In this document: positions 18,170-46,827 of the stretch, in pieces
Layout of the letters: each line of letters begins with the position of its first letter
Position numbering within the stretch: position 1 is the first letter of the stretch
DNA from: Octopus bimaculoides
Taxonomy: Eukaryota
Assembly: GCF_001194135.2 (NCBI RefSeq)
Contig: NC_068995.1
Location: 37,790,196 to 37,843,495 of the forward strand
Direction of reading: 5' to 3'
DNA length: 53,300 nt
Made by a program: the position numbers and the translations under genes
Notes under the pieces: generated by a model
Seen by the model: the letters and a program-made list of their open reading frames with translations, nothing else
Told to the model about the DNA's origin: nothing
Databases searched by the model: none

Positions 18170-19369
18170 ATGATGCTCATGAAATATTTGACTTTTAGCT
18201 TGAGTTCAATTGTATTGATAGTAAATTCCAACCCAACGCATGAGGATGAAGAGCGATTGAAAAATACCTTGCTTTTGAATTATAGAAAAGATATAAGACC
18301 TGTTTTTAATCTGTATACAACTATTGATGTAAGTATTAACTTGACTCTTCACACACTGTATGACTTGGACTTCGTAAATAACTTACTGAAGGCTCGGTAT
18401 TTGATTTCAGCATGGTGGACTGATGAATATCTGACCTGGAATCCATTGGACTATAACAACATTGAACACATATATATACCAGAAAATCTTATATGGACGC
18501 CATCTCTGATGATGTGTAATTCAGTGAATGAGCAAGGTGATTCGAATATCAATCGCGAAGTATACGTTGACTATGAAGGAACAGTGTATTTGTGGTCTCT
18601 TAAGTACATAGAGACCTATTGCCAAGTCAACGCTTATACGTATCCATTTGATGTCCATTACTGCGGAATAGAAATGTGTGTTCCTTTACATTCTCCTAAC
18701 GAAACAAGAATACAAACAATCTATTACCGGAATATGAATTTTACAGAAAACTACAAGTGGGATATTCATTTCTCTGGTGAGGCAAATGGCAAAGTCGAAG
18801 AATTCAGTTATGCATTAGTGGGAATGAGGTTACGACGTAAACTCACCGTAGGAATCCTAGCTATGTTGATTCCGACAGTAATGATGACTATTTTAACTGT
18901 TTTTGTTTTTCTTCTGCCTCCTGAGTCAGGGGAGAAAGTCTCTTTAGCAACAACAATATTTTTATCAAACGTCTTGTATCTTGTTCAAATCGATAAGAAT
19001 ACACCAAAAAATTCGAAAAATCCTTCACTGCTTATCTTATATTTAATGTTATTGTCAATGTTAAGTGGTATCGTCACACTTGGATCTGTGGTTATAAGCA
19101 AGTTGCATGTTAATCAATCATCTCAAGAAAATAAAAACAAAACTCAAAATAACAAAGTTGCAGATGCTTCAATAATTTCCACGGTAAAATCACAAACTCT
19201 TCATGAAAAAGAACTTCAAAGTAAGAAAAAGAGAAACTGCATTTCCGATCACGAAAGACTGGATGCCATATTTCTAAAAATTGCCATCGTATTATTGGTT
19301 ATAATTTCAATAGTGTTTTTAGTTTTGTTATTTGAGTTTGATGACTTACAAGACCAACAATATTTATGA
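18170..19369 (+). CDS. Atypical nicotinic acetylcholine receptor-like Cys-loop subunit (cephalopod chemotactile receptor-like), copy 1; 399 aa, uninterrupted CDS
   Basis: First ATG at 18170 (the track start at 18152 is TTG). Signal peptide, RP(V) motif, WTD.YL.W, WTP, Cys-loop C-x13-C (CQVNAYTYPFDVHYC), pre-M1 LRRK, M1, PPESGEK-M2, M3, short intracellular loop, M4. No vicinal CC. Confidence 0.95.
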   Translation: MMLMKYLTFSLSSIVLIVNSNPTHEDEERLKNTLLLNYRKDIRPVFNLYTTIDVSINLTLHTLYDLDFVNNLLKARYLISAWWTDEYLTWNPLDYNNIEHIYIPENLIWTPSLMMCNSVNEQGDSNINREVYVDYEGTVYLWSLKYIETYCQVNAYTYPFDVHYCGIEMCVPLHSPNETRIQTIYYRNMNFTENYKWDIHFSGEANGKVEEFSYALVGMRLRRKLTVGILAMLIPTVMMTILTVFVFLLPPESGEKVSLATTIFLSNVLYLVQIDKNTPKNSKNPSLLILYLMLLSMLSGIVTLGSVVISKLHVNQSSQENKNKTQNNKVADASIISTVKSQTLHEKELQSKKKRNCISDHERLDAIFLKIAIVLLVIISIVFLVLLFEFDDLQDQQYL

Positions 19370-20020
19370 TGTGTCTGTTAATTTACGAATCATAATTTTT
19401 ATCTTTTATTTTTCATATATCCTATATATTTTCTTAGACATTCTATGATCACGACGGAGTTTCGGTGTAATCAAAATATTTAAAGAATTTGCCTTGTACT
19501 TCTAAAACTCAGTCCCGATTGCTACTATAGATATATAACTGATATTAAATAATTAAATGTGCCATTGCCATGCTACAGTGTATTTGAACAAAGTAGTAAT
19601 GAAGAGAGTTATTGCTTTCGCAAATAAGGCTTAATTTAAATTTCAAGCATGATATTATAAATTTTAATAAGTTTGATAATTGTAATTTGGTCAGTAATTC
19701 GTTTCGAAGGTAGTGGCGTAAAAGATTCAACTGTAAACAGCGACATTTATGAATTATACATCTAAGGTTATGTGTTATTACAAGAAATGCAAGCATATGG
19801 GGATGCGTCGAAATATACGATCATGTAACACATTCATATTCGGTATATGAAAGTGAGCATTGAAGAACAGTTAATATTGTAAGGAAATAAGTGACACAGA
19901 AAATAAAAGTGTTTTAACGTCTTTTGAGTTTAGTGTTACACCGTATGACATTTTACATAATCTCTTTGATACATATATGTATATATGTGTGTGTGTGTGT
20001 GTATGTGTGCGTGTGTATAT

Positions 20021-20168
20021 ATAGGCGTGACTGTGTACGAAGAATCTTGCTTTCTAACCACATAGCTCTGGGTTCAGTTCCACTGAAGTGTATTCTTCAC
20101 TAACATCGGGCCGACCAAAAACTTGTGAGTGGATTTAGTAGATAAATACTGCAAGAAGCCCGTCATAT
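20021..20168 (+). mobile_element. Degenerate copy of an abundant tRNA-related SINE
   Basis: Homologous to the cleaner copy at 25116-25282 (gggttcagttccactg, cgggccgacc, ttgtgagtggattt, aagaagcccgtc). Confidence 0.75.
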
Positions 20169-22609
20169 ATTTAGATATTTATATGTCTCTATGTGTGTGA
20201 CCTTGTGAGTGCGTTTGTCGCCCCCATCATCGTTTGAGAACCGTTTATTCCACATAACGTAGCAGCTCGGCAAATGAGACTGATAGGCTTTAAAAATAAG
20301 TCCTGGGATCAAATTGTTTGATTAAAATCTAGCATGGCCGCAATCCAATGACTGAAACAAAAGATAAAAGATATAACAAATATACGAATGCAGAAAATCA
20401 AATCTTTAATTGGTGATTCCACTATGCAATATCGACGATGGTTTCTGTTGTATCAACATATAGAGATACAGGAAATATCAGTCAATCTGAAATAAGCGAA
20501 AATGTATGTTAACACAACATTATCAAGGCAATGCAAAATTTGTTAAATTCAAAGTGATATCTTACGATAATCGGGGCTATGCCCGTCTGCTTGTCCGTTT
20601 GTCCATCTCTCTGTCTGTTCCCTCTTCGCGGCCAGAAGGTTGGACCAGTGGTTACGATATTTTTTAGGGTTACAAAGACCCTCATCTGGAAGGGTTTTAG
20701 CGTTAAACAAATCAGAAAGTATGATTCTTTCGTGGATATCGGTTTTTGAATTGACGAACCAACTTCGCATTTTTATTAAAAATTCACCGACGGCGAGTAA
20801 CTCTGCATTTTCATCGTATACTTGATGGCTCCATCGTAGATACGAAGGCGAAAATAAATGGGAAAAAGTGTATGTCAGTATATAGTGTGGGTGATTATTT
20901 AGTGGTTAAAATGTGTCCGTCTCGAGCAGGATTCGAAACGGCTAATCGAAACGGCTGTTGTTTACATCTTGGTTTTGTCAATCAACATAACCCACTATAA
21001 CAGAACATCCAGACATTATTCGCATAGATCAGTGAAAGTTAAGTCTTGGTTTGATTTTTTGCAACCCTAAAGATTCAGCTCGTGCATTTACTGCAAATAT
21101 CGCACATGGCCAGACTTTAGATCTGTATTTTAAACGACTACACATTTCTGTAAGACATCAACCAATAATCAAACAATCAAACATATCCTCTTCATGGATG
21201 ATTTGAATTTGTATGAAAGGGATAAGGCACAAATGAGTTCTTTGTGGAACACGGTCCTTGCTTTAGTGTTGATTTTAGAAAGTAACTTGGACTCAAGAAG
21301 TGTGGTATAATGTACACGAAAGGAGGCAAGGTATAATCACTGGAATTACCTTCTAGAGAATTGATTAAACAAATTGAAAAGAAAGGCCACAAATGCCATG
21401 GCATACAAGAGTTCAACGAAACCATGGAGAAGGAAATGAAAGAACAACTTAGGGGTGGAATATTTCCGAAAACTAAGATTGGTGTTGCACTCAAAGTTCA
21501 CCGGATGGAACTTATCCGAAAACTAAGATTGATATTGCGCTCAAAATTGACCGGATGGAATAAAATCCAAGCAGTTAATATATGGGCAATAACATCATTT
21601 AGGTATGGAACTGGAATCATAAACTCACAAACGAAAGAACTGATGAACATAGATATGCAGTCAAGAAGAATATTGACGGTATACAAAGACTTCTACATTA
21701 AGAGAGGCACCGATAAGTTATACTTGCCCAGAAAAAAAAAATGGGACAAGTTTGATCAGCTGTTAGGATTGTATCAAAACAGAGGAAACCAACTTAAGGG
21801 TGGTATGTAACCGTGGAACTATCGTTGAAACATATGAATAAGCCCGGCGTCAACAAAGTTGATAATTTGGTAAAGAAAGGAAGACTTAGAGAGGAAAAGA
21901 AGGCAAAGAAGAAACAGCTTGCTAGGAGAGAAAATGTATAGTCAGTTTGCATGAGATACGAACACGAAGACAGCTACAGAAGACCGGTGGCTATGGATGA
22001 GAAATAGTGATCTGAAAATAGAGAACTAAGTACTAATATGAGAGACACAAGAACAAGTATTACGAACTATATGAAGTGCAGTATCGACGACACTATCGAG
22101 AGTTACAAACGCGGAAGGTGTGGTGAGAGGGGTGAAACGGTATGGCACGTCGTTAGCGAATGTCCGAAATTCGTACAACGCGATTACAAATGACGACATG
22201 ACAATGTTGCGAGAACGATACATTGGGAGCACTAAGAAAACCACAGCCTATAAAGGGCAAGACGTGGTCTGAGAAAACCCTCGAAGGAGCCACCGAAAAT
22301 GAAGATTGCAAAATCGTGTGGGATGCAACGATTCAGTTCGATCGCCTGACCGGACATCGGAAGCCGGACACTGATGTGGCGAATAAAAAAGAAAGATTTT
22401 GCATGATAATCAACATAACAGACTCATAGAAAAAGCTGAACAACTACGACGATTTGAAGTGGGAAATACGAAGGTTGTGGTATATGAAGAGAGAAGGCGT
22501 GATATCAATAATAACTGGCGCACTTCGAATTATCAGCACTTATTAAGACTCAAACAGATTGTACTTTATTTACATTTGACGGATATTTGTCCTCATCTTG
22601 TTTATTGTT

Positions 22610-22652
22610 AACACAACGTTTCGGCTTATACCTGGTGCCTTCATCAGGAGTC
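22610..22652 (-). ncRNA. Minimal hammerhead ribozyme motif in a Penelope-like terminal repeat (22561-22700)
   Basis: Minus strand reads gactc CTGATGA a ggc-accaggtataa-gcc GAAA CG TT gtgtt. Stem III is palindromic ACGT and stem I has one mismatch. Confidence 0.7.
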
Positions 22653-22716
22653 TTGGGGAAATTTCGAACGAGAGTTCTCATTCCTAAGGTAATTTTTGAT
22701 TTTGTGGTTGTTGTTG

Positions 22717-22764
<48 letters not shown>

Positions 22765-22765
<1 letters not shown>

Positions 22766-22826
22766 GGCGTAGTAGTTAAGAGCGCGGGCTACTAACTCTG
22801 AGTTCAATTCCAAGCAGTGACTTGAA
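22765..22826 (+). mobile_element. tRNA-derived SINE head between microsatellites
   Basis: A-box-like TGGCGTAGTAG and B-box-like GAGTTCAATTCC, with no tRNA cloverleaf 3' half. Confidence 0.6.
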
Positions 22827-22838
22827 TAATAATAACAA

Positions 22839-22935
<97 letters not shown>

Positions 22936-23049
22936 CATCGAAAATACCTTTGGGAATGAGAACACGNNNNNNNNNNATAATAATAATAATAATAATAATA
23001 AACATCGAAAATACCTTTGGGAATGAGAACACGTTCGACATTTCCCCAA

Positions 23050-23092
23050 GACACCTGATGAAGGCTGGAGGGTATATCAGCCGAAACGTGTT
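23050..23092 (+). ncRNA. Minimal hammerhead ribozyme motif, inverted sister of 22610-22652, in repeat ~23008-23150
   Basis: gacac CTGATGA a ggctg-gagggtatat-cagcc GAAA CG T gtt; a small deletion affects the cleavage site and stem I 3' strand. Confidence 0.65.
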
Positions 23093-23384
23093 AACAACAG
23101 GCAAGATGAGGACAAAATCCGTCAAATATAAATAATGTAAATAATGTACCTAATTCCTCATCTCTTATATATAGAACTGTATTATCAAAGAGATTGATAG
23201 AAAAGCGCAGACAGAACATCTACAAAAATTAGCATCCCTAGAAACTGCAAGAATTCTTCGCGTGACATAGAACTTCTGGTCCGTATCAACGATTTCAGGT
23301 CATCATAAATATTGAACGTTTTACCATTCAAAGTATTTTGCAAAATTCGAAATAAATTGTAATCTAATAGTGCAAGGTCAGGAC

Positions 23385-24371
23385 TATAAGGAGTTGCAAA
23401 TATAAGTAGACAATAAGTGGGAAAAATTAATATTTACTTAATCACTTCCCAACCAAGCTCCAATTACTAGCAAAAACGCGTGCGGTATAGTGATGTGGTG
23501 GAACACGATTCCTATACGATTTGCCAATTCTGGTTGTTTTCCTTTAATTGCATCCTCTAGTTTCAATAGCTGTTGACAGTAAACATCTGAGTTGATCGTT
23601 TGGTTCCTTGGAAGTAGCTCAAAATACACAACACTTTTGTAATCCCACCAAATTGACAACATTACCTTTTTGTTGAGGCAATTTAACTTCCGATGTGGTT
23701 TGTGCTGGTTCATTACGCGAGGACCATGATTGTCTTCGATTATTGCTATTGTAGACAACCCATTTCTCATCACCAGCGATGATTTGCTTAAAACAAGGTC
23801 GATTTCATTGCATTTGAGAAGCATATCGCAAATATTGATTCGTTGTGTTGAGTGAATCTCTTTATGTGGAACCCAAATATCGAGCTTCTTGATGAGTCCA
23901 AGTCATTTTAAGTGTTTTTCAACTGTTGTATGTGGTACATTTAACCTCTCTACAATCTCCCGTGCAGTTATATGACAATTAGATTCAATTGTGGCTTTGA
24001 TTCGGTCATTATCATCTTCTGTAGATCGTCCAGAGCGTTCTTCAACTTTCAGTGAAAAATCTCCAGAACGGAATTTTTGAAGTCATTTTTGACATGTACA
24101 TTCTGTTAAGCAATCAATATCATAAACTTCACATATATCTTTGTGAGCCTCAGCAGCAGTCTTGCCTTTATAGAAATAAAAAAAGCAAAATATGGCGAAC
24201 ATGTTCGTTTTTGCACCCTATGTTAAAATTTACACTGAAATAGCAGCTGTAAACAAAATTAGGCGCAGTTTGCTTCTAAAGTAAACTAAAATTGACAAAG
24301 CTTAAAAAAAAAAAAAAATTGTAACTCTATCCATTTGCGAAAATTAGAATTACTTCCTTGCCAACCTTATA
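23385..24371 (-). mobile_element. Decayed mariner element
   Basis: KKVMLSIWWDYKSVVYFELLPRNQTINSDVYCQQLLKLEDAIKGKQPELANRIGIVFHH. The ends resemble diverged TIRs (tataagg..ttg.caa). Confidence 0.85.
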
Positions 24372-25115
24372 TACATATATGTATATATATANNNNNNNNN
24401 NNNNNNNNNNNNNNNNNNNNNNNNNNNNNNNNNNNNNNNNNNNNNNNNNNNNNNNNNNNNNNNNNNNNNNNNNNNNNNNNNNNNNNNNNNNNNNNNNNNN
24501 NNNNNNNNNNNNNNNNNNNNNNNNNNNNNNNNNNNNNNNNNNNNNNNNNNNNNNNNNNNNNNNNNNNNNNNNNNNNNNNNNNNNNNNNNNNNNNNNNNNN
24601 NNNNNNNNNNNNNNNNNNNNNNNNNNNNNNNNNNNNNNNNNNNNNNNNNNNNNNNNNNNNNNNNNNNNNNNNNNNNNNNNNNNNNNNNNNNNNNNNNNNN
24701 NNNNNNNNNNNNNNNNNNNNNNNNNNNNNNNNNNNNNNNNNNNNNNNNNNNNNNNNNNNNNNNNNNNNNNNNNNNNNNNNNNNNNNNNNNNNNNNNNNNN
24801 NNNNNNNNNNNNNNNNNNNNNNNNNNNNNNNNNNNNNNNNNNNNNNNNNNNNNNNNNNNNNNNNNNNNNNNNNNNNNNNNNNNNNNNNNNNNNNNNNNNN
24901 NNNNNNNNNNNNNNNNNNNNNNNNNNNNNNNNNNNNNNNNNNNNNNNNNNNNNNNNNNNNNNNNNNNNNNNNNNNNNNNNNNNNNNNNNNNNNNNNNNNN
25001 NNNNNNNNNNNNNNNNNNNNNNNNNNNNNNNNNNNNNNNNNNNNNNNNNNNNNNNNNNNNNNNNNNNNNNNNNNNNNNNNNNNNNNNNNNNNNNNNNNNN
25101 NNNNNNNNNATATAT

Positions 25116-25277
25116 ACGACGGGCTTCTTTCAGTTTCCGTCTACCAAATCCACTCACAAGGCCTTGGTCGGCCCGAGGCTATAGTAGAAGACACTTGCCC
25201 AAGGTGCCACGCAGTGGGACTGAACCCGGAACCATGTGGTTGGTAAGCAAGCTACTTACCACACAGCCACTCCTGCG

Positions 25278-25282
<5 letters not shown>
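25116..25282 (-). mobile_element. Well-preserved tRNA-related SINE; relatives at ~8355-8420, 20021-20168 and ~34010-34140
   Basis: Minus strand reads aggcgcaggagtggctgtgtggtaag (A-box-like)...gggttcagtccca (B-box-like)...gcaccttgggcaagtg...gaagcccgtcg, flanked by TA repeats. Confidence 0.85.
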
Positions 25283-25310
<28 letters not shown>

Positions 25311-25419
25311 TCATGCATATATTTGCATATATGAACAAGGGAACCTAGTAAATCTTTTATACATTCCTAAGTACGTGTATGCCTATATAATGCTTATATT
25401 CATATCTACCTATGTAAAC

Positions 25420-25451
<32 letters not shown>

Positions 25452-27239
25452 GCGCACACACATACACACACTCTCTCACTCTTTCACACGCACATACACA
25501 CACACATGATATATGCTTGAATCTTCAACACGTGTACATTCACATACGCGTAAATATATATAAGCGTACAAGTGCGTGTGTGTGCGTACTTGTGCGTATC
25601 TGTTTATTTACGATCAAACGTGTGCACATGGCAGAGTACTTCTTTGGCTTACATTTATGACCGTTCTCAGAGAAAGGTATTCTCACTGGAATATATAAAA
25701 AGTTATACCTGTTTGCAAATATAGGTCATTTATAGTATATACAGTGTTGTAGTGCTATTCATATGCAAGTAATAAGAAAAACAAATATATGATTAATTGA
25801 TTTACTTAGGACACAGAAACCACAAAAATAGGTTTTTAAAGAGACGCACTTGTATAGGAAGTATGCATATATGTATGTGAAAAATAGGGGCTTAGGGTTG
25901 TATAGTTATTAAGACTAATCAAATAAAATATAGTTAAATGTAAAGTTAAAATACATTATATACAAAACTAATAGGGCCTAATCTGTATATGTGTTAAACT
26001 TGTGAAGTTAAGTAATTATATATGTATGATAAAAGCGGGATTGATACTGAAAGAAGTAAAATAAATATATTACTTGATACCATATTCAAATCTAAATATT
26101 TCTCTATTTGAACAATAAAAAGATGATAATATGGAACAAATCTAAATGTATGTGTTTACATGGCACACACCCTGGTGTTTATAGAAAAAAACTGAAGTAT
26201 TAATTTGACGATATGTAGTGAGACTGTGATATGACTGTATCAGACAAAGTAAGTAATACAAGTTCGGGACATGACAGGATATGGAGTCTAGGAATTTATA
26301 AGACAGGAGTGCAAATAGGAGTAAATGTAATGAAGAGCAGACAAAGTCTGATACGTTAATAGAAAAAAAACATGTTACACAAATGTGGAATATATGTTTG
26401 AAATATCAATACCCGGTTGGCTTCAGATATATTTCTAGTTATTCATATAATTCTTTATTTCGGAATAGAGATAATTGTGTAGGCATTATATATCTCCCTA
26501 GTAAGAGGAGGAAGCATTTGAAGTGGTGATGCAAAAGTGGATTCTATAATTTTCCGGTTAATATAGTAGCGATGAACACCATTGTCCTTCACATTGCTGT
26601 TTGTAGAAAGGTTTGTTGCACCTGTTTTATGCTGTACCTAAATAAAAATATATGTTGTATACACCTGCATATGAATGTAATTGGTCTTTAGTGTGATGCA
26701 CATATGGCATTTTGTATTGCTATTTCCTATTATCTAGCAAGATATATGAACATTTATTTTCTTTTTTGACAGAGTGAGGTTGACTAGTGGGGCATTGTAG
26801 TGTTGGATCCGTTTTGAATTTCTATGCCATAATTTCTTTATAGTAGTAATGACTAGGTCGAAAATTTACACTAAACATTTTCTTCAATTCGTTTGCTACT
26901 ACTTTTATTTCAAATATTAAGGGGGATATCTGAGCAGGTATTCAAGCCATATTATACTAAATAATATTCATACCTCTTTATAGTAAAACATTTAGTACTT
27001 TGCATAGGATTCTATTTTTTACTTTTTGTGTCCGTGAAACATCTCCTAGTGGAACCTCATTCTATATTTGTGCTATACTGATAAATATTTCTTTAACTCA
27101 AATATACTTATAATCCTTTAACTCACATTATCAATTGGTTTCTTGGTATTTACGGAGTGACTGGAGCATTAACAGTTACCGGATAACATGTCCAGAATTC
27201 TTTTATTAAATAGTGGATAAGTAGAAGACTTCAAGTTGA

Positions 27240-27890
27240 GATTAATGTGTAAGATTGTAACAATGCAAACATCAGTTCTGAAACTAAAGGTTTACGAACT
27301 TTAAAGCGAGTGAGGCCATTTTCTATTAAGTGTATTCATCAAAGATTATTGCATGAAACTTAGGACGTTATCTAAAATAAATAAATCTGTTAGATAACAA
27401 ACCACTGATCCAATGACGAGTAACACTGGAATATCGATGTATCAGCGTTATGTTCACCAAATAAAATACATTTAAGAAAGAAGGAATTTTACCATCGTAC
27501 GTAACAATTTAAATATTTAAATGAGTAATTGGAGTGTTTGACTATGGCTAAAACCAACTTCCTATTAAATTGGGATCAGAAACAATGAAGAACAATTCTG
27601 CGATGTCAGAAAGCAATAATTATTCACACTTTTCACATATTTAAATGACTCTCATTATACTGTATACAGTGAGTATTATTTTTATATATGAAGTCAAATA
27701 CATGTATATTATTATAACACAAACTATTGTAGAATGTTGTGATTTTGTAGCACAATGACATTTAAATATTTACACACAACTTGAAATAAAACATATTGAT
27801 TTGTCTGTGTTTCCCATAATAAAATTACTTTATCGAATATTGACTGATTTCAAAAATCGGTGTGTCTCTGTCTTATTAAATTTCTGTATA
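27240..27890 (+). other. Non-coding block paralogous to 50380-51030
   Basis: Colinear anchors: taacaat.caaac, ga.gcca.ttt..a.taagtgt, att.ttgcatgaaa.ttag, tccaatga, ggaattt.acc, gtcagaaagc, ttaaatgactc, tttttatatatgaagt, ttataacacaaactatt, ttattaaatttctgt. Confidence 0.75.
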
Positions 27891-31824: not shown

Positions 31825-31888
<64 letters not shown>

Positions 31889-33895: not shown

Positions 33896-33949
<54 letters not shown>

Positions 33950-36307: not shown

Positions 36308-36340
<33 letters not shown>

Positions 36341-36354
36341 TACACACACATACA

Positions 36355-36426
<72 letters not shown>

Positions 36427-36459
36427 AGTAATTGAGAATGTATGTCTGTGTGTGTGTGT

Positions 36460-37752: not shown

Positions 37753-38418
37753 TATATATATATANNNNNNNNNNNNNNNNNNNNNNNNNNNNNNNNNNNN
37801 NNNNNNNNNNNNNNNNNNNNNNNNNNNNNNNNNNNNNNNNNNNNNNNNNNNNNNNNNNNNNNNNNNNNNNNNNNNNNNNNNNNNNNNNNNNNNNNNNNNN
37901 NNNNNNNNNNNNNNNNNNNNNNNNNNNNNNNNNNNNNNNNNNNNNNNNNNNNNNNNNNNNNNNNNNNNNNNNNNNNNNNNNNNNNNNNNNNNNNNNNNNN
38001 NNNNNNNNNNNNNNNNNNNNNNNNNNNNNNNNNNNNNNNNNNNNNNNNNNNNNNNNNNNNNNNNNNNNNNNNNNNNNNNNNNNNNNNNNNNNNNNNNNNN
38101 NNNNNNNNNNNNNNNNNNNNNNNNNNNNNNNNNNNNNNNNNNNNNNNNNNNNNNNNNNNNNNNNNNNNNNNNNNNNNNNNNNNNNNNNNNNNNNNNNNNN
38201 NNNNNNNNNNNNNNNNNNNNNNNNNNNNNNNNNNNNNNNNNNNNNNNNNNNNNNNNNNNNNNNNNNNNNNNNNNNNNNNNNNNNNNNNNNNNNNNNNNNN
38301 NNNNNNNNNNNNNNNNNNNNNNNNNNNNNNNNNNNNNNNNNNNNNNNNNNNNNNNNNNNNNNNNNNNNNNNNNNNNNNNNNNNNNNNNNNNNNNNNNNNN
38401 NNNNNNNNNNNNNNNNNN

Positions 38419-38458
<40 letters not shown>

Positions 38459-38569
38459 CATACATACATCTACATACCTCACTAGCATCATAGCCCACTA
38501 GCTATTCTATCTACATATAAGTGGCCACTAAATATTCTATCTGTATATAAATATAAACTTGCAGAAACA

Positions 38570-39815
38570 CATAGTTAAGTTTAACACGAAACAATACATG
38601 CAGGTTCAATTTGCAGCCATTGGTGTCGGTGTAGCTGGAGATATGGGTGACTTCTTCATGGCCTGGTGGGACAGAAAAGGTAAGCAATCGTTAGCAGAAC
38701 AGTCCACAACTCTTCTACTTTACACTAGGTATGTAGATGACATTAATATCTTAGTTAAGACCAACTCTAGTAACGGTAATGTAGAAACTAAGAGGAACAT
38801 AATGGACAGCATCTAGTAAGCAGCTAACGCCATCCACCAAAGTGTCAAGGTATCTATACATTACCTCACTAAGCACAACAACAATAGACTCCCCGTCCTT
38901 GATACTGAACTTTGGTTAAAGGCTATGAACAACTGAGTGCACCACATCCACTGCTATTACATGGAACCCATATCTTCGAAATAAGCTGTTAACAAGGACT
39001 GAGCTTTGTCACACAACATGAAAATTAATATACTGATAGCAGACGTAGGTAAAGGAGCTACGTGTCCCCACTTTGCAAACCCTATGAATCGAAGAAACAC
39101 CACATGCAATTCTCTGGATATGATAAAAAAAATAGGGTTCGAGTATACAGGGGTGCTAGAAAGAAGTTAGATAACATTATATGTAATGAAACCAGTGATA
39201 CCTGACAAACATATGGAAGCAAATGCGGGAGTAGAATACAAAGATCTTGCGACAAAAGAAACAGGTTGACCCGACAAATATCAAGGAGTGATGTTTGTAG
39301 AATCCAGAGTCCATGGGGAACTAGCCCGTAGATTTCGGAAAGCTCTGAAGGAGACCAGACTCGACATTAAGATTGTTGAACAGCTAGGGAACACCATCAA
39401 ACCACAACTATGTTCGACGTACCTCATTTGAGAATACCATATGCAGCAATGATATTTGCATGATATATAGGATTAGTCCTGGCATTAACTGTTAAACTAG
39501 AGATGTAGTCTACAGCATAAAGTGCATAGAAGGTACTTGTAAAGACATTAACATAACATACAGAGGGGAGACATCTAGGAGCATTGTGGAAAGATAAATC
39601 AACATTTGGGACAATATGACGACAAAAAACAATTTTCCATACTCTACCAACATGACAAGGAACAGCATGGAGATAACCTAGGTCAACTTGACATCCGCAT
39701 ATCATCCATGCACCCGAAGGACCTAACCCTCAGAGTACGTCCTCCTAAATTGAATATCCGCAGTACTAAATAGGAAATATACGTAGTAGGTAACCATACC
39801 CTCATAGCCACAGTT
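38570..39815 (+). mobile_element. Decayed Penelope-like element (RT plus GIY-YIG endonuclease)
   Basis: YTRYVDD (YVDD 38730-41), LPVLDTELW, QFSGYD, YQGVMFVE and C*TRDVVYSIKC...YRGETSRSIVER (39490-39597). Confidence 0.8.
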
Positions 39816-41160
39816 CATATTTATATGCACGTTAGCGGGCTGTTATGTAGATGTGTGTATGTGTGAGTGTGTGTATGTATACGTATATGTATATGCACAT
39901 GTATGTAAGCAAACGGATATGAATGCAAACAGATTGACATACAGACGGATACGTACATAGGTAATATGAACAGACAAGCACACATATACACACACATACG
40001 CAAATGAAAACTGAAACACATGATCATATACACATACACTTCGCTTCATACAAGGACACATAAGGAGACACACATCCACACATATAGAGATACACATCCA
40101 TACATACATACAGACACAGGACATGGCTACAAAAACCAATAAAAACACACAGACACACCCAGACATGCACATACACACATGCAAATACACACACATGACA
40201 CACACACACATAAATAAACACAAACACGAATACACAAACACACAAATACGAATATGCAGAATAAATATAAACGTACACACATACATACATATAAACGTAT
40301 GTACACAGACATACATATATACGTATGTACACAGACATACATATATATACATTCATACACACATGCATGCATACATACATACATATATACATACATACAT
40401 ACACACATACATACATACATAGATAAATTCATGTGTTTGCACACACACACTGGCCCACACACATGCGCACAAACAAAAAGAACGCAGCTCGGATAACGAA
40501 CAGAATCAACGACTATTGAAAACATTGGAAGACGCAACGAAAATTATAGAAAAATAAATGAGTTGGCATCTTTAGCGTGTATTCAATAAAAAGGAACTAA
40601 TAGAGAATGACTCTCCCCAGATACAGCAAAATGTGCTTTAGCACATGAATCTCACATAAAGAATCTTGCAAACCAAATCGCCAAATGAAATATATATATA
40701 TATATATATATATANNNNNNNNNNNNNNNNNNNNNNNNNNNNNNNNNNNNNNNNNNNNNNNNNNNNNNNNNNNNNNNNNNNNNNNNNNNNNNNNNNNNNN
40801 NNNNNNNNNNNNNNNNNNNNNNNNNNNNNNNNNNNNNNNNNNNNNNNNNNNNNNNNNNNNNNNNNNNNNNNNNNNNNNNNNNNNNNNNNNNNNNNNNNNN
40901 NNNNNNNNNNNNNNNNNNNNNNNNNNNNNNNNNNNNNNNNNNNNNNNNNNNNNNNNNNNNNNNNNNNNNNNNNNNNNNNNNNNNNNNNNNNNNNNNNNNN
41001 NNNNNNNNNNNNNNNNNNNNNNNNNNNNNNNNNNNNNNNNNNNNNNNNNNNNNNNNNNNNNNNNNNNNNNNNNNNNNNNNNNNNNNNNNNNNNNNNNNNN
41101 NNNNNNNNNNNNNNNNNNNNNNNNNNNNATATATGCGGAGTATGTATGTATCTATGTATA

Positions 41161-42440
41161 ATCAGGTCATTAACAATGAAATGTCCGATTTTCTAACGCA
41201 CGAGGTTTGACAGTCGTTAACCCTAATGTTTTACCCCGACAATTTTTTATTTGACAACATTGAAGAGTTACATTATCACTTTCCGAAATGCAATTCATGG
41301 TGTCTGATTATATTGTAAGTTTTCTCTTGTAAATCAATGTTTGTGAAACCATGAATAGATAAATAAAAATACAAATCGTGTTGTTTATGAATATGAGTTC
41401 CGTCGTGGAATCAATGCATCTGAGACAGCTCGAAGCATCAGTAAAGAAGATATGGCTAATGAGCACACTGTACGTCGAGGATTTGAGAAGATCCTGTCTG
41501 GTGACTTTACTCTTGAATATCAGTCCCGTCGCATACATGAGACGAAGTTGGGTAATGATGCGCTGGAAACTGTAGTGGAAGCGAATACATCTCAAACTAC
41601 ACGTGAATTAGCAGCAAGCTTTCGATTCCAACAGTATTGGACCATCTGAAACAAATCGGCAAGGTAAAGACGCTGGACAAGTAGGTACTACATGAACTGA
41701 ACTGAAGAAGCATCAAATGACACGTTGTCTTGAAACTTGATGCTCTTTGCTGTCACGACATAAGAGCAAACCATTTTTGTATCGTATTGTTGCGTGTGTT
41801 GAAAAATGAATTCTTTTCAACAATAGCAAACGTTCTGCACGGTGGGTGGATAGAGACGAAGTGCCAAATCACAATTCAAAAAAGAATATTCACCCCAAAA
41901 AGCTAATGGTGTCTGTTTGTTGGTCCAACGCTGGTGTCATACGGTACAGCTTCATGAGGCCTGGTATCTCAATTAGAAAAGATCTATACATCAACCAATT
42001 GGATGAAATGATAACTGAATTTACAATTAAACAACTGAGATTGGTCAATAGAGACAGGTCAGTTCTCTTGCAAGACCACATGTTGCAGAAAACAAAAACC
42101 GCTACTCAAATTACAGGAACTGAACTTGGAAGTAATCTGTCATCCACCATATTCACAAGACCTTGTACCAATGCACTATCACATTTGCCAAGCATCAGAC
42201 AGCATTTTGCTAGGAATAAACTTCAAATGTGAAGAAGATGCAAAAACCTCCTTTCGTGATTTCATCACCTCTTGCTCGCCAGAATTCCTCGCTGCTGGCA
42301 TACAAAACGCTAACGATAAAATGGCAAAATTGCGTTGATAATTTAGGTGTATACTTTGATTAAATGCATTTCTATTTGTTGAGATAAATTAAAATAAATT
42401 TCCAGTTCAAAATCAGACATTTCATACTTAATGACCTGAT
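41161..42440 (+). mobile_element. Full-size (~1.28 kb) but inactivated mariner element
   Basis: TIRs atcaggtcattaacaatgaaatgtccgatttt and the reverse complement of aaaatcagacatttcatacttaatgacctgat. Remnant motifs ACVEK*ILFNN, KKLMVSVCW, LLQDH and HPPYSQDLVP, with stops and frameshifts. Confidence 0.9.
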
Positions 42441-42759
42441 GCATACATATGTATCTATGCATGTGTGCACATTTGCATGTAAGTTTGTACTATGCATGTA
42501 TGTGTGTGTACGTGTATGTGTGTGTATGCATATACATATACATGCGTGCGTTGTGCACGTTTGTATGTATGCATGAATTCTGCATATCCAAGTGCTTGTG
42601 TGTCCATGCTTATGCGTTTTTGTGTGTGTGTTTGTGTTCACGTTTGTGAATTTGTATGTGTGTATGTGTGTGTCTGTGTTTGTGTGTATTTGTGTGTACC
42701 TCCGTTTCCTTGTGTGAGCATGTTTGTGTCTGTTTGTGTATGGGTTTGTGTGACTATGT

Positions 42760-43405
42760 GAACTGTGGTTATTGGGGTGTGACACTTCTTAATGAGGAAG
42801 TACTCTTCTACTTCTCTGAGTGTTGGGTCCTTCGATTGCTTGGATAGAATGCAGATGTCAACTTGACCCACTGTTCCTCCACGTTGGTCTTTGGTATACT
42901 GGTAGAGTATGGAGGATTGTTTTTTTGTTGTCATTTTGTCTCAAATGTTCATTCAGTCTCTCCGGAATGTATATTATATTATATTCTTGTCTTTAGAAGT
43001 CCCCTCTATGCACCTTAGGCTGTAGACAACATGTCTAGTTCAAAAGTGAATGCCAGGGTTAATCTTAGATACGCTGCAAGTTATCATGTGGTATTTTCCG
43101 TCCTACATCGTTGCGATCTGATGGAGATCCGTGGCTTTTCAACGATTTTAATGTCGAATTTATCCACCTTCCGAGCTTTCCTAAATCTAAGGACAAGTTC
43201 TCCGCAGGCTGTGTCCTGTACAAACATCACTCCTTGATATTTGTCGGTCTTCTACCACGTGTTGACCCTGTTTGATTGGTCAGAAACTATTTGTCTCCTA
43301 TTCTAGTCTTTATTTCTATATCTCGGGCAGGTACCACTGGTTTCATTACTTATAATGCTATCTAACTTATTTCTAGCACCCCTGTAGACCCTGTGCACAA
43401 AAAAA
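42760..43405 (-). mobile_element. Second copy of the same Penelope-like family (3' half), inverted relative to 39130-39815
   Basis: The reverse complement shares tacaggggtgctagaaa.aagttagata.catta, ccgacaaatatcaaggagtgatgtttgta, gtctacagc.taa.gtgcataga and tccatactctacca. Confidence 0.85.
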
Positions 43406-43406
43406 C

Positions 43407-43472
<66 letters not shown>

Positions 43473-43491
43473 ACAATTATTCAGTAGCCAT

Positions 43492-43552
43492 GATAAAACT
43501 CCGAGTTTCAGATGTCACTGCGGAAACCCACGCCGGCATCTCTTCAGTTATC
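43492..43552 (-). ncRNA. Hammerhead ribozyme motif within a ~280 bp Penelope-like terminal repeat (43472-43750)
   Basis: Minus strand reads gataa CTGAAGA gatg-(22 nt)-catc t GAAA CTC g GAG TT ttatc. It has a 5-bp stem I, a near-palindromic stem III and one extra U before GAAA. Confidence 0.65.
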
Positions 43553-44704
43553 GGGCCATCGAAAAAAACGCTATGAAAATGACCGTTAAAACAAAAGGAA
43601 ATTACTGTGTGATTGACCGTTATTAAGACAAAAGAGCTATAAGAATGACCGCTAAGTAAAAGGAGGGAGTAAAGGTAAGGGAGTAGAAATCTTCATAGTA
43701 ATTGCGTAAACGTGCATGTCCATATATACACATGAGCGCCACCACACCCACTTGCTCACCGATACATTCGCCAAAAAATATATACATACCCGCATACACA
43801 CTCGAACACACGCGCACAAAATGTTTGTTCATTTCAGTTTTTCTTTCATTCTTTCTTACTTTCTTTAATTACAGTCTTGAGTTGTTTCTTGTCTCTCACT
43901 TCTTTTATCCCTCTTGAATTTTCTCGCTCTCTCCTTTTTATATTATCCCCTTCATTTCTATTTTTACCTTTTCCTCTCTCCTTGTCTCTTCTTTCTTTGC
44001 CGATCCTTTGTTGTTTTTTTCTTTCTATTTCTCTCTCAAAATACTTATAAAATGTTTCGTAATCTATCCATCTTCAGACATGAGTTCTCTGTAACCTAAT
44101 GTAATACGGCTTTATCCAATGATCGATTGTAGTAATTATCCAATTGTACGTGGGCCACCAAACCAAATTTCTTGACCACCATAATGGTAAAAGCTATTTA
44201 GGAACCAACGATACAATTTTGTGCTTATAATATACATACATTTACATACATATGTTTTGAGTTCGACCTGTGCAGAAACCAATATACATTACAATTTGGG
44301 AATCACTACGTCAGTGTACTTATCCATGTTTGATTTTTCACTCACACGGTGTTAAAGAAAATTCTAAACAACAGAATAGATGTGGTACCACCTACTTGTA
44401 CTTCACATATCATTTCTACATAGCGACGGAAGCAAATTTGGATATTTGGTTTCTTGACAACTATGTTCTCACTATTACAATTTCCGATAACCACCTCTTG
44501 CACGATGGCGGCAAACGGTAATCTACTGAATCATCTGCTCCTTTTTCAGCATTATGTAAATAATCAATTATATGACATGAAATTCATAGACGCACAAATA
44601 TTGAGCAGGACAAAATTTCAGTAGTATGAGAAGAGTTGAAGAAATTTGATTATTTTTGTAAAGTAGATCAGGGTCTATACAGATTTCGTTCTGATTGTGT
44701 ACCG

Positions 44705-44905
44705 TTATTCTCCTTGTTTGCAGGAATCTTTGGTATGCCAGGCGAAGTGCTCAGAGGTATTTCGTCTGCCGCTACATTCTGAGTTCAAATTCCGCTGAGG
44801 TCGACTATGCCTTTCATCCTTTCGGGGTCGATAAGTTAAGTACCAGTTGAGTACCAGTGCAATGTGATCGATTTTCCCCCTCCCCACAAAATCCTGACCT
44901 TGTGT
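44705..44905 (+). mobile_element. Deu/Nin-like SINE, sister of 33429-33597
   Basis: Shares ggtatttcgtct.ccgctac.ttctgagttcaaatt and gcctttcatcctttcggggtcgataagttaagtaccagtt. Confidence 0.75.
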
Positions 44906-45000
44906 CTATAGTAGATCGGATTATTATCCTTGTTTGCATTGTTGAAACATTATTGTCATGATACTTTAAAAAAATATTGATACATATGACATTTTCTAGA

Positions 45001-45015
45001 ACTTGTTTCTTTCAG
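45001..45015 (+). promoter_or_regulatory. Candidate 3' splice acceptor of a 5'-UTR intron, receptor copy 2
   Basis: acttgtttctttcag, 618 nt upstream of the ATG; homologous to 17621-17637. Confidence 0.5.
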
Positions 45016-45633
45016 GTTGCTGAATCACCGAGATACCCTGTATATTTATGGCATCAAAACATTTCTTCATTTATATCAAAGAAGACAGTCTGATGTTGTG
45101 TTCAGTTTTGAGACTGGAATTATAATACCAGATATAGATATATATATATATATATATATATATTTGTACTTGTATCTAAAAAATATGAAATAGAAAATAA
45201 CTACTTATATAACAACATTCGAGGGAATATATAAATGGAAATAATTAAACAACTTTGACTCTTCAGATGGCAAATTACCTTCACATTTACACCTTATAAT
45301 TTAAAGGAATAAATTGACCAGAACATTTTTCATATAGGTATTATACATTGCAAAACACTTTTTGAAAAGAAATACCGAGCATTTTACGATAATTCATTGT
45401 TTGTATACTGCATTTAAAGTTGGTTTTATGCTCCTGTTGAATGATTCAGCTCTATCGTTATCTAGATAACTTCTAGTATATCATCTTGCATCAATAACAA
45501 AGTGAATAACGCTCATTTACGCAAAATTTAATATAAACATTACAATATTAAAACATATCGATATTTAATAGAAACAGTTATCACAAGAGTTGAGATAAAC
45601 TAATAGTTAACTCTCATTGAAATATAATTGATA

Positions 45634-46827
45634 ATGATGTCCATAACATATTTTGTTTTCAGTTTGACTTCGATTATTTTAATAGTAAAATCTAATCCGA
45701 CGCACGAGGATGAAAAACGATTGAAAGACAACCTGCTGTTGAATTACAGAAAAGATATAAGACCTGTTATTGATTTGTTTACTTCTGTCGATATATATAC
45801 TGATTTGGATCTTCATACACTCTATGATTTGGACTTTGTAAATAACATACTCAAGGCTCGGTATATGATTGGGTCATATTGGACCGACGCATATCTAATC
45901 TGGAAACCATCAGAATATAACAATATTACAGAAATAAATTTACCAAGACAGGAAATATGGACCCCATCTCTTATAATGTGTAATTCAGTGAATGAACCAG
46001 ATGATACGAATATCAATCAAGAAACCAAGATTTATTATGATGGAACTGTCGAGATGTGGTCACTTAAGTACATAGAGACCTATTGCCAAGTGAACGCTTA
46101 TACGTATCCATTTGATGAGCATAAGTGCGAAATACATATATGCGTTGCTGTACAATCTATTCGTCAAACGAGAATACAAAAAATGTATTACAAGAATCTA
46201 AATGTTACAGAAAACTACAAGTGGGATATCAATATGTTTGGAGTGGTATTTCAAGAAAATGATGCGGGCAGTCAGGCATCTGCGGTGATGTATCTACGAC
46301 GCAAACCTACAGTAGGAATCATAGCTATGCTGATTCCGACTGTAATGATGACTGTTTTAACCATTTTTGTATTTGTTCTGCCGCCTGAATCAGGAGAGAA
46401 AGTTTCTCTAGCTACGACAATATTTTTATCAAACGTTTTGTATCTTGTTGAAATCGATAAGAATACACCGAAAAATTCGAAATATCCGTCACTTCTCATG
46501 TTATATTTAATGTTATTGTCAATGTTAAGTGGTATGGTCACACTTGGATCGGTGGTTATAAGCAAGTTGTATGTTAATCGGTCATCCCGAGAAAAGAAAT
46601 CGACAGACCGAAAGAAAAACAAATCTCAAAGTAACAACATTGCAGATATTTCAATAATTTCCATGGTAAAATCTGAATCTCTTGAAGGGGAACTTCAAAG
46701 TAAGAAAAAGAGAAATTGTATCTCCGACTACATAAGACTGGATGCCATATTCTTAAAAATTGGGATTGTTATATCGATTATAATTTCAATATTATTTACC
46801 ACTTTGCTATTTACACCAATGGAGTAA
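45634..46827 (+). CDS. Atypical nicotinic acetylcholine receptor-like Cys-loop subunit (cephalopod chemotactile receptor-like), copy 2; 397 aa, uninterrupted CDS
   Basis: First ATG at 45634. Same architecture as copy 1, with Cys-loop CQVNAYTYPFDEHKC, PPESGEK-M2, four TM helices and no vicinal CC. It aligns without gaps to copy 1 through M3. Confidence 0.95.
   Translation: MMSITYFVFSLTSIILIVKSNPTHEDEKRLKDNLLLNYRKDIRPVIDLFTSVDIYTDLDLHTLYDLDFVNNILKARYMIGSYWTDAYLIWKPSEYNNITEINLPRQEIWTPSLIMCNSVNEPDDTNINQETKIYYDGTVEMWSLKYIETYCQVNAYTYPFDEHKCEIHICVAVQSIRQTRIQKMYYKNLNVTENYKWDINMFGVVFQENDAGSQASAVMYLRRKPTVGIIAMLIPTVMMTVLTIFVFVLPPESGEKVSLATTIFLSNVLYLVEIDKNTPKNSKYPSLLMLYLMLLSMLSGMVTLGSVVISKLYVNRSSREKKSTDRKKNKSQSNNIADISIISMVKSESLEGELQSKKKRNCISDYIRLDAIFLKIGIVISIIISILFTTLLFTPME

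What the first reader, a model, noticed from the sequence alone, without database searches (positions are those of the whole stretch)
18170..46827. Tandem pair of uninterrupted-CDS, non-cholinergic nAChR-like receptors: part of a chemotactile-receptor-type array
Seen: two same-strand ~400 aa Cys-loop subunits with uninterrupted CDSs, 27.5 kb apart, in otherwise transposon-filled DNA. Both lack the acetylcholine-binding signature: loop A Tyr is Cys (MCNSV), loop B Trp is Pro/Ala, and loop C has no vicinal CC and is about 6 residues shorter than human alpha7. Established: octopus has a tandemly expanded, sucker-expressed family of atypical nAChR-like genes (Albertin et al. 2015), shown to be taste-by-touch chemotactile receptors (van Giesen et al. 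2020). Inference: these two belong to that family or a sister expansion. The family is known, but I cannot tell whether these paralogues have been deorphanised.
Basis: partly seen in the sequence, partly recalled or inferred. Interest (0 to 1): 0.85.

Follow-up and report, generated by a model that had tools for sequence, protein, structure and literature searches.

The report
Two octopus chemotactile receptor genes

Summary
Two same-strand, single-exon, gap-free ORFs (18170-19369, 399 aa; 45634-46827, 397 aa) are 69% identical and encode complete Cys-loop receptor subunits. The window is Octopus bimaculoides GCA_001194135.2, CM046615.1. Both are about 60% identical to the solved chemotactile receptor CRT1 (E 5e-142 and 3e-147), against about E-31 for human alpha7. 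In a bootstrapped tree they fall inside the Octopus CR clade (100%). They belong to a tandem array of at least 9 single-exon copies in 240 kb. Albertin et al. 2022 already describe this as a 26-gene, sucker-expressed cluster on chromosome 15. Both genes look functional: the ORFs are intact despite dS of 0.2-0.5, and the pore region is strongly constrained (omega 0.12-0.33). Their ligand pockets differ from CRT1 at positions where CRT1 mutants lose all responses, so I predict different ligands or heteromeric use. Expression and ligands could not be tested. Side findings: the only public protein for gene B is a chimera with a mariner relic, several neighbouring models are N-truncated, and "transposon-filled" is only partly shown.

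The parts
18170..19369 (+). Gene A: single-exon CR subunit CDS, 399 aa. Signal peptide is residues 1-20 (18170-18229), extracellular ligand-binding domain 21-224 (18230-18841), TM1-TM3 225-312 (18842-19105), short disordered cytoplasmic loop 313-362 (19106-19255), and TM4 plus tail 363-399 (19256-19366).
   Evidence: ORF. Pfam LBD and TM domains. The exact protein is already in NCBI, UniRef and EukProt as a single-exon model. CRT1 E 5e-142. AF2 pLDDT 80.9 with four TM helices. Best fold match is 8eis.
45634..46827 (+). Gene B: single-exon CR subunit CDS, 397 aa, from the conserved ATG; signal peptide 45634-45693.
   Evidence: ORF. Pfam. CRT1 E 3e-147. The ATG and signal peptide align in register with A, P0005, P0012 and CRT1. 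This exact protein is absent from the public collection.
17886..18169 (+). Upstream segment of gene A that is still alignable with gene B's upstream. It is the 5' end of the duplicated unit and probably holds the 5'UTR and proximal promoter (inferred).
   Evidence: blastn of the +/-5 kb units: A-B homology starts 284 bp before the ATG. Alignment A1.
45214..45633 (+). Upstream segment of gene B alignable with the upstream of A and P0005 (duplicated unit).
   Evidence: blastn: B-P0005 homology starts about 420 bp before the ATG, and A-B about 295 bp before it.
19346..19369 (+). C-terminal extension of gene A. The ancestral stop (TAA in B and P0005) is TTA here, so the ORF reads 7 further codons (LQDQQYL) of former 3'UTR before TGA.
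   Evidence: Aligned tail DNA of A, B and P0005. tblastn of A runs past B's stop codon.
19590..19979 (+). Weakly conserved 3' flank of gene A (67-87% to B's 3' flank); probable 3'UTR. AATAAA/ATTAAA motifs at 19544, 19552 and 19902.
   Evidence: blastn; motif scan.
46982..47398 (+). Weakly conserved 3' flank of gene B (67% to the 3' flanks of A and P0005); probable 3'UTR. It runs up to the gap at 47423.
   Evidence: blastn.
41359..42335 (+). Decayed mariner/Mos1-type transposon relic. It is not part of the receptor, but NCBI model XP_052829359.1 takes its first coding exon (41452-41634) from it.
   Evidence: HTH_48 at 41359-41646 (E 5e-4) and Transposase_1 at 41810-42229 (E 2e-19). tblastn of the P0002 N-terminus maps to 41452-41640.

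Best explanation
Genes A and B are two functional paralogues of the octopus chemotactile receptor (CR) family. CRs are intronless descendants of nicotinic receptor subunits that assemble into pentameric cation channels in sucker sensory cells. They are opened by poorly soluble contact chemicals that bind where acetylcholine used to bind.

Shown here: family membership, gene structure, position in the array, loss of the ACh-binding residues, retention of the channel machinery, and selective constraint.

Inferred from CRT1 and CR840 in the literature: assembly as homo- or heteropentamers, sucker expression, gating by hydrophobic ligands, and cation/Ca2+ permeation.

Further inference: the pockets of A and B differ from CRT1 at positions where single CRT1 mutations abolish all responses. 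They are therefore probably tuned to ligands other than CRT1's (nootkatone, norharmane, progesterone), or act only as partners in heteromers.
For: Membership.
- CRT1 is the top solved relative over the full length (E 5e-142 and 3e-147, about 60% identity), 100 orders of magnitude ahead of alpha7.
- The Octopus CR clade has 100% bootstrap and the A/B subclade 94%.
- The fold match to 8eis has target-normalised TM 0.95.

Gene structure and array.
- Every model spans exactly 3 x (aa+1) bases.
- At least 9 copies lie on one strand within 240 kb of CM046615.1: A 37808365, B 37835829, P0005 37850586, P0012 37888904, P0020 37933499, a nonsense copy 37938883, P0024 37956736, P0018 37982856 and P0013 38047762.
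- This matches the published 26-gene cluster on chromosome 15 (PMC9068888) and the published intronless structure (PMC13174522).

Loss of the ACh site: Y93C, W149P/A, and a loop C deletion without Cys-Cys.

Channel machinery kept.
- The Cys-loop is present.
- A's M2 is identical to CRT1's, and B differs by one residue at the outer end.
- Both keep the -1' Glu and 9' Leu.
- The acidic vestibule residue (CRT1 E104) is Asp in both.

Functionality.
- NG86 omega is 0.40 for A-B overall, 0.12-0.33 in TM1-TM3 and 0.41-0.98 in the ligand-binding domain.
- Under neutral substitution at the observed dS, the ORF stays open in 0.1% (d=0.10) or 0 of 5000 (d=0.24) simulations.
- A neighbouring copy does carry a stop codon, so decay is visible where it has happened.

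Divergent tuning.
- CRT1 Y39 -> T (A) or D (B), Y58 -> L/M, F124 -> L/L, A152 -> P/A, L153 -> L/V, L191 -> E/A, F192 -> F/G.
- In CRT1, Y39T, Y58V and F124V give no response to progesterone or norharmane (bioRxiv 10.1101/2025.10.28.685082).
Against: - There is no expression evidence for these two genes. No transcript-derived contig encoding either exact protein was found, and no RNA-seq tool was available.
- No ligand data exist for them in the held literature.
- A versus P0005 has omega 0.78 overall and about 1 in the ligand-binding domain. This could reflect relaxed constraint in one of the two rather than diversifying selection.
- Pocket predictions taken from CRT1 point mutants ignore epistasis.
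- NCBI annotates gene B with a spliced, signal-peptide-less product. If that product were the only transcript, B would not make a receptor.
Confidence: 0.88

Rival explanations
1. One or both genes are young, unexpressed or decaying duplicates (incipient pseudogenes) whose ORFs merely happen still to be open.
For: The array does contain decay: a full-length copy with one in-frame stop at L007 15385-16563. A versus P0005 has omega 0.78 overall and 0.98 in the ECD. Gene A has lost its ancestral stop codon. There is no expression evidence.
Against: Both ORFs are intact over about 1.2 kb at dS 0.2-0.5. Simulated neutral evolution keeps the ORF open in at most 0.14% of trials even without indels. 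TM1-TM3 omega is 0.12-0.33 in all three pairs. The signal peptide, Cys-loop, M2 and the paired pocket cysteines are all retained.
Confidence: 0.07
2. They are canonical acetylcholine-gated nicotinic receptor subunits, as their RefSeq name says ('acetylcholine receptor subunit alpha-like 2').
For: The RefSeq name. Pfam domains are shared with nAChRs. Alpha7 and Torpedo subunits are significant sequence and fold matches.
Against: They lack Y93, W149, Y188 and the C190-C191 pair, so they cannot be 'alpha' subunits by definition, and loop C is shortened. They are nested in the CR clade with 100% support, away from alpha7. Characterised CRs do not respond to ACh (PMC10338036; PMC11526382).
Confidence: 0.02
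3. Gene B is really a multi-exon gene producing the 459-aa protein XP_052829359.1, with a non-receptor N-terminus and no signal peptide.
For: This is the only public model of the gene. A polypyrimidine-AG motif exists at about 45660.
Against: Its first exon lies inside a decayed mariner transposase, with HTH_48 and Transposase_1 on the same strand. The 'acceptor' is the conserved Phe-Ser-Leu coding sequence that is also present in A and P0005, where it is not spliced. The in-frame ATG and signal peptide at 45634 are conserved with CRT1, A, P0005 and P0012. All other family members are single-exon. Such a transcript may exist as TE-driven read-through, but it would not yield a membrane receptor.
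Confidence: 0.05

Closest known systems
Octopus bimaculoides chemotactile receptor CRT1 (formerly CR518 by my recollection; PDB 8EIS, 9E6B-D, 9YI4)
   Same: About 60% identity over the whole length. Same length and topology, single-exon gene, signal peptide and Cys-loop. M2 pore lining is identical in A. An acidic vestibule residue is kept. W122, V151 and the C96/C150 cysteine pair are kept. The ACh aromatic box and vicinal Cys are lost in the same way. The predicted fold superposes at 1.6 A.
   Different: Pocket residues differ: Y39 -> T/D, Y58 -> L/M, F124 -> L, A152 -> P (A only), L153 -> V (B only), E167 -> R/K, S169 -> M/L, L191 -> E/A, F192 -> G (B only). Several of these positions abolish CRT1 responses when mutated. 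Gene A has a 7-residue longer C-terminus. The ligands of A and B are unknown.
P0005 (O. bimaculoides 'acr-2-like', 13.6 kb downstream of gene B) and its O. vulgaris relative P0004
   Same: Closest paralogue of gene A (74.5% protein identity, dS 0.20). Same strand and same array. The conserved 5' flank and start context (TTACAGAAAATG) are shared with A.
   Different: It lies outside the window. Its pocket differs again (Y39 -> I, A152 -> G, L191 -> Q). Its public model is N-terminally truncated.
Squid chemotactile receptor CRB1 (PDB 8EIZ)
   Same: Same cephalopod CR clade (99% bootstrap) and same fold (TM 0.83). The loop B Trp and the vicinal Cys are lost.
   Different: Only about 29% identity. 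CRB1 keeps the loop A Tyr and lacks the loop A/loop B cysteine pair. It is reported to sense bitter tastants rather than terpenes (PMC10338036).
Human alpha7 nicotinic acetylcholine receptor
   Same: Pentameric Cys-loop cation-channel architecture, the -1' Glu and 9' Leu of M2, and about 25% identity.
   Different: Alpha7 has the full aromatic box (Y93, W149, Y188, Y195, W55), C190-C191, a longer loop C, a long cytoplasmic loop and a multi-exon gene. A and B have none of these.

Membership tests
Cys-loop (pentameric ligand-gated ion channel) superfamily | N-terminal ligand-binding domain plus a four-helix transmembrane domain | tested here: met
   Pfam PF02931 (E 4e-31) and PF02932 (E 1e-14) above the gathering score in both genes. 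The AF2 model has a beta-sandwich ECD and helices 227-248, 254-277, 287-327 and 360-398.
Cys-loop (pentameric ligand-gated ion channel) superfamily | Signature Cys-loop, two cysteines 13 residues apart, with the FPFD-type motif | tested here: met
   A has C-QVNAYTYPFDVHY-C and B has C-QVNAYTYPFDEHK-C. Both cysteines are invariant in the alignments.
Cys-loop (pentameric ligand-gated ion channel) superfamily | Assembly into pentamers | not testable with these tools
   Inferred only, from 60% identity to CRT1, which was solved as a homopentamer (PDB 8EIS has 5 chains).
Cephalopod chemotactile receptors (CRs) | Monophyly with functionally defined CRs (CRT1, CRB1), separate from canonical nAChRs | tested here: met
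   NJ tree of 81 sequences with 100 bootstraps: CR clade 99%, Octopus CR clade with CRT1 100%, alpha7 elsewhere. The exhaustive search shows a steep drop after the CR group.
Cephalopod chemotactile receptors (CRs) | Intronless coding sequence | tested here: met
   Both CDSs are single uninterrupted ORFs. Gene A's NCBI model is single-exon. The spliced NCBI model of B is a TE chimera. The feature is described in PMC13174522.
Cephalopod chemotactile receptors (CRs) | Location in the tandem CR cluster on O. bimaculoides chromosome 15 | tested here: met
   At least 9 same-strand copies lie at 37.81-38.05 Mb of CM046615.1. The cluster is reported in PMC9068888. That CM046615 is chromosome 15 is inferred from accession order.
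Cephalopod chemotactile receptors (CRs) | Loss of the acetylcholine-binding residues (aromatic box, vicinal Cys of loop C) | tested here: met
   Y93C, W149P/A, W55L/M, Y188 deleted, no C190-C191, loop C 6 residues shorter.
Cephalopod chemotactile receptors (CRs) | Hydrophobic CRT1-type orthosteric pocket | tested here: inconclusive
   The inner-pocket residues W122, V151 and L/V153, and the C96/C150 pair, are kept. Several rim positions are polar or charged in A/B (T/D39, E191 in A, R/K167). No coordinates were available to measure the pocket.
Cephalopod chemotactile receptors (CRs) | Enriched expression in sucker or hectocotylus sensory epithelium | not testable with these tools
   No RNA-seq access. 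Only genome-derived contigs encode these proteins in the collection.
Cephalopod chemotactile receptors (CRs) | Not gated by ACh; gated by poorly soluble contact ligands | not testable with these tools
   Requires electrophysiology. Known only for CRT1, CR840 and a few others.
Canonical nicotinic acetylcholine receptor alpha subunits (as the RefSeq name implies) | Vicinal Cys-Cys in loop C plus the conserved Tyr/Trp aromatic box | tested here: not met
   None of Y93, W149, Y188 or C190-C191 is present. Not filed here.

The most novel reading that the evidence does not exclude
The A/B/P0005 subclade (94% bootstrap) may be a functionally distinct CR subtype. Its pocket has lost the CRT1 residues needed for terpene, beta-carboline and steroid responses (Y39, Y58, F124) and has gained polar or charged rim residues (T/D39, E191, R/K167). 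It would then detect a different, possibly less hydrophobic, class of contact cues, or serve only as a tuning partner in heteromers. Separately, the perfectly co-varying loop A/loop B cysteine pair (CRT1 C96/C150: 32 of 39 CR-clade sequences have both, 7 have neither, none has one alone, and 0 of 42 non-CRs have the pair) may be a CR-specific disulfide that replaced the Tyr/Trp core of the ACh site early in CR evolution.
Probability: 0.35. Interest if true: 0.4.

Novelty: already known. Interest (0 to 1): 0.15.

Why it matters
The CR family is a textbook-in-the-making case of a neurotransmitter receptor turned into an external chemosensor. Its existence, intronless structure, chromosome-15 cluster, lost ACh site and sucker expression are already published, so these two genes add nothing conceptually.

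The practical value is modest.

- **Uncharacterised members.** Of the 26-member family, the held literature names only CRT1 and CR840 as characterised, besides an unnamed panel of five. A and B are probably uncharacterised, and the pocket table gives concrete predictions: no CRT1-like ligand profile.
- **Defective public models.** Gene B's protein is a mariner chimera without a signal peptide. At least four neighbouring models are N-terminally truncated. One near-intact pseudogene is annotated as a fragment. These errors could distort family counts, selection analyses and cloning.

Tried and rejected
- **Primary papers.** van Giesen 2020, Allard 2023, Kang 2023, Albertin 2015 and the 2023 primer are not held. 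Their content is cited only through held papers that quote them.
- **Named CRs.** I tried to match A and B to named CRs (CR840 and others). The held preprints give no accession numbers or gene ids, and no supplements are held, so deorphanisation status stays open.
- **More CR copies in the window.** tblastn with both proteins found only chance-level hits (E > 0.1) besides the two genes.
- **Correct gene B protein.** I looked for the 397-aa form, the 396-aa form from the second ATG, and the TTG-start form in the 15-billion-protein collection. All are absent.
- **Transposon content.** Pfam on 20 intergenic ORFs gave 5 TE-related hits, one below the gathering score, and 15 with nothing. The repeat proxy reaches only about 17%. 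'Transposon-filled' is therefore not demonstrated, though non-coding SINEs would escape both tests.
- **RNA families.** Rfam at gathering thresholds found nothing in the window.
- **Canonical nAChR and pseudogene readings.** Both were considered and rejected; see the rival explanations.
- **Loop A/loop B disulfide.** It could not be confirmed. The structure tools return no coordinates, and the held papers do not mention it.


Full report
**What is there**

Gene A runs from ATG 18170 to the stop at 19367-19369 (399 aa). Gene B runs from ATG 45634 to the stop at 46825-46827 (397 aa). They are 69% identical. Each carries Neur_chan_LBD and Neur_chan_memb above Pfam's thresholds. tblastn with both proteins finds no third copy or fragment in the window.

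- The window has 17 N runs, and none lies in either CDS.
- The nearest gaps are 3.6 kb from A on either side, and 4.5 kb upstream and 595 bp downstream of B.
- Eight gaps (2,803 N) lie between the genes. The scan's program listed six; the other two are 37765-38418 and 40715-41128.
- The 27.5 kb spacing (27,464 bp start to start) is therefore an assembly estimate.
- Nearly all gaps are bordered by TA, CA or GA microsatellites, so they look like unresolved simple repeats.
- ORFs of this length are far beyond chance: the longest ORF in 20 shuffles of the non-CDS DNA was 236 aa (mean 133).

**Where it comes from**

Gene A's exact protein is already in NCBI, UniRef and EukProt. Both genes map to Octopus bimaculoides assembly GCA_001194135.2, record CM046615.1 (58.16 Mb). 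Window base 1 corresponds to record position 37,790,196, in the same orientation.

**What the genes are**

- Against all PDB sequences, the best matches are octopus chemotactile receptor CRT1 (9e6b/8eis): E 5e-142 for A and 3e-147 for B, about 60% identity from signal peptide to C-terminus.
- Next come squid CRB1 (E-41 and E-43), then alpha7 nAChR and 5-HT3A (about E-31 to E-33).
- An exhaustive HMMER search of 1.84 billion representatives shows the same cliff: 54%, 48%, then 35-37% identity for cephalopod CRs, then a broad nAChR-like plateau.
- I built a neighbour-joining tree of 81 sequences with 100 bootstraps. It used the CR hits, the nearest non-CR hits, and alpha7, 5-HT3A and CRB1 segments recovered from the printed HMMER alignments.
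  - The cephalopod CR clade has 99% support.
  - The Octopus CR clade including CRT1 has 100%.
  - A subclade of A, B, P0005, an O. vulgaris protein and two transcript-derived proteins has 94%.
  - Alpha7 lies elsewhere.
- An AlphaFold2 model of A (pLDDT 80.9; the only low-confidence stretch is the cytoplasmic loop, residues 327-358) is closest to 8eis (target-normalised TM 0.95, rmsd 1.6 A), then CRB1 (0.83).

HMMER's alignment of A to human alpha7 and a MAFFT family alignment agree.

| alpha7 feature | Gene A | Gene B |
|---|---|---|
| Y93 (loop A) | Cys (MCNSV) | Cys (MCNSV) |
| W149 (loop B) | Pro | Ala (= CRT1 A152) |
| W55 (loop D) | Leu | Met |
| Loop C | 6-residue deletion removing Y188, no C190-C191 | same |
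| Cys-loop (C-x13-C) | intact | intact |

The channel machinery is conserved. A's M2 is identical to CRT1's, and B differs by one residue (Q to E at the outer end). Both keep the -1' Glu and 9' Leu typical of cation channels. The vestibule acidic residue tied to Ca2+ permeation in CRT1 (E104) is Asp in both.

**Array context**

Look-ups of other O. bimaculoides family members place them all on the same record and strand.

| Copy | Start on CM046615.1 |
|---|---|
| Gene A | 37,808,365 |
| Gene B | 37,835,829 |
| P0005 | 37,850,586 (13.6 kb past B, 7 kb beyond the window edge) |
| P0012 | 37,888,904 |
| P0020 | 37,933,499 |
| Unannotated near-full copy | 37,938,883 |
| P0024 | 37,956,736 |
| P0018 | 37,982,856 |
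| P0013 | 38,047,762 |

- Every annotated model spans exactly its CDS length, so each is a single exon.
- Albertin et al. [quoted passage not shown] CM046615 is the fifteenth accession of the chromosome series (my inference).
- The intronless structure is cited as characteristic of CRs (PMC13174522).
- The 26-member count and the ACh-insensitive, hydrophobic-ligand gating are in PMC11526382 and bioRxiv 10.1101/2025.03.03.641191.
- The duplicated unit is compact: the CDS, 150-420 bp upstream and about 0.5 kb of weak similarity downstream. The rest of the intergenic DNA is unrelated.

**Are they functional?**

- Nei-Gojobori estimates give A-B dN/dS 0.40 (dS 0.48), B-P0005 0.36 (dS 0.52) and A-P0005 0.78 (dS 0.20).
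- TM1-TM3 is strongly constrained in every pair (0.12-0.33). The ligand-binding domain is relaxed or diversifying (0.41-0.98). This is the pattern published for the family.
- Neutral substitutions at half the observed dS leave the ORF open in 0.12-0.14% of 5,000 simulations at d=0.10, and in none at d=0.24, even ignoring indels.
- A neighbouring copy (L007 15385-16563) is full-length but has one in-frame stop. Decay is therefore detectable where it has occurred.
- I conclude that both genes are under purifying selection as channels. Expression could not be tested.

**Predicted tuning**

CRT1's mature numbering is the precursor number minus 20 (8 of 8 landmark residues match). The published CRT1 pocket positions map as follows.

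| CRT1 residue | Gene A | Gene B |
|---|---|---|
| L37 | N | D |
| Y39 | T | D |
| Y58 | L | M |
| W122 | W | W |
| F124 | L | L |
| C150 | C | C |
| V151 | V | V |
| A152 | P | A |
| L153 | L | V |
| E167 | R | K |
| S169 | M | L |
| L191 | E | A |
| F192 | F | G |

In CRT1, Y39T, Y58V, F124V and L37A each give no response to progesterone or norharmane. By inference, which ignores epistasis, A and B should not share CRT1's ligand profile. They may detect other cues or work in heteromers, which the literature says CR subunits form.

**Gene B's public model is wrong**

- The only public protein is XP_052829359.1 (459 aa, "acetylcholine receptor subunit alpha-like 2").
- Its first 64 residues map to 41452-41640, inside a decayed mariner element on the same strand: HTH_48 at 41359-41646 and Transposase_1 at 41810-42229 (E 2e-19).
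- A short second exon maps near 44722-44754. The acceptor falls inside the signal-peptide codons near 45660.
- That "acceptor" is the conserved Phe-Ser-Leu coding sequence also present, unspliced, in A and P0005. The ATG at 45634 aligns in register with the starts of A, P0005, P0012 and CRT1.

**"Transposon-filled"**

This is only partly supported.

- Mariner relics lie at 11666-12118 (-), 23441-23902 (-) and 41359-42335 (+).
- There is a sub-threshold RT fragment at 6074-6364.
- There are 18 tandem or microsatellite arrays.
- About 17% of non-N intergenic bases repeat, either within the window or against 105 kb of other array DNA. This is a lower bound.

**Verdict**

The novelty is nil at the level of the system: family, cluster, gene structure and lost ACh site are all published, and gene A is annotated as such. 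What remains open is the ligand and expression profile of these two paralogues. Interest is low (0.15).

Noticed in passing
window 41452-41634, ~44722-44754, ~45660 (NCBI model XP_052829359.1 = P0002): The only public protein for gene B is a chimera. Its N-terminal 70 aa come from a decayed mariner transposase and a small intergenic exon, spliced into the signal-peptide codons. The product would lack a signal peptide. The correct 397-aa protein is absent from the 15-billion-protein collection.
   Followed up: yes
L002 9962, L004 9902, L006 9830, L008 9935 (P0005, P0012, P0018, P0024): Four neighbouring CR gene models are N-terminally truncated in NCBI (342-387 aa). In each, the ORF continues upstream to an in-frame ATG, giving 396-400 aa with a signal-peptide-like start.
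   Followed up: yes
L007 15385-16563 (CM046615.1:37,938,883-37,940,061), plus fragment L007 16868-17564: A full-length CR copy with a single in-frame stop (…NYAHHI*PIINL…), annotated only as a 177-aa product. It is a very young pseudogene or a sequencing error. A further CR fragment lies just downstream.
   Followed up: partly
window 19346-19369: Gene A has lost the ancestral stop codon (TAA in B and P0005 is TTA here). It reads 7 more codons of former 3'UTR (LQDQQYL), lengthening the extracellular post-M4 tail.
   Followed up: yes
gene A residues C115/C170 (window 18512-18514, 18677-18679); gene B equivalents; CRT1 C96/C150: The Cys that replaces the loop A Tyr, and a second Cys five residues after the Cys-loop (loop B), co-vary perfectly. 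In the CR clade, 32 of 39 sequences have both and 7 have neither; none has only one. None of 42 non-CR relatives has the pair. This suggests a CR-specific disulfide across the former ACh site. C150A abolishes all CRT1 responses in a 2025 preprint. The held literature does not mention a disulfide, and I could not check coordinates.
   Followed up: partly
window genes A and B versus L002 (P0005): Gene A is closer to P0005 (dS 0.20, 83.5% DNA identity) than to gene B (dS 0.48), although B lies physically between them. This implies non-adjacent duplication, a two-gene-unit history with loss, or gene conversion limited to the CDS.
   Followed up: partly
window 37765-38418 and 40715-41128; all 17 gaps: Two further assembly gaps lie inside the finding's range beyond the six listed by the scan's program. 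Nearly all gaps in the window are flanked by (TA)n, (CA)n or (GA)n runs, so they are most likely unresolved microsatellites.
   Followed up: yes
window 11666-12118 (-), 23441-23902 (-), 6074-6364 (+): Additional decayed mariner/Mos1 pieces are present: HTH_48 (E 6.5e-6) and Transposase_1 (E 2e-21). There is also a weak reverse-transcriptase fragment (RVT_1 E 8e-5, below the gathering score), with further unassigned ORFs at 6749-7365.
   Followed up: partly
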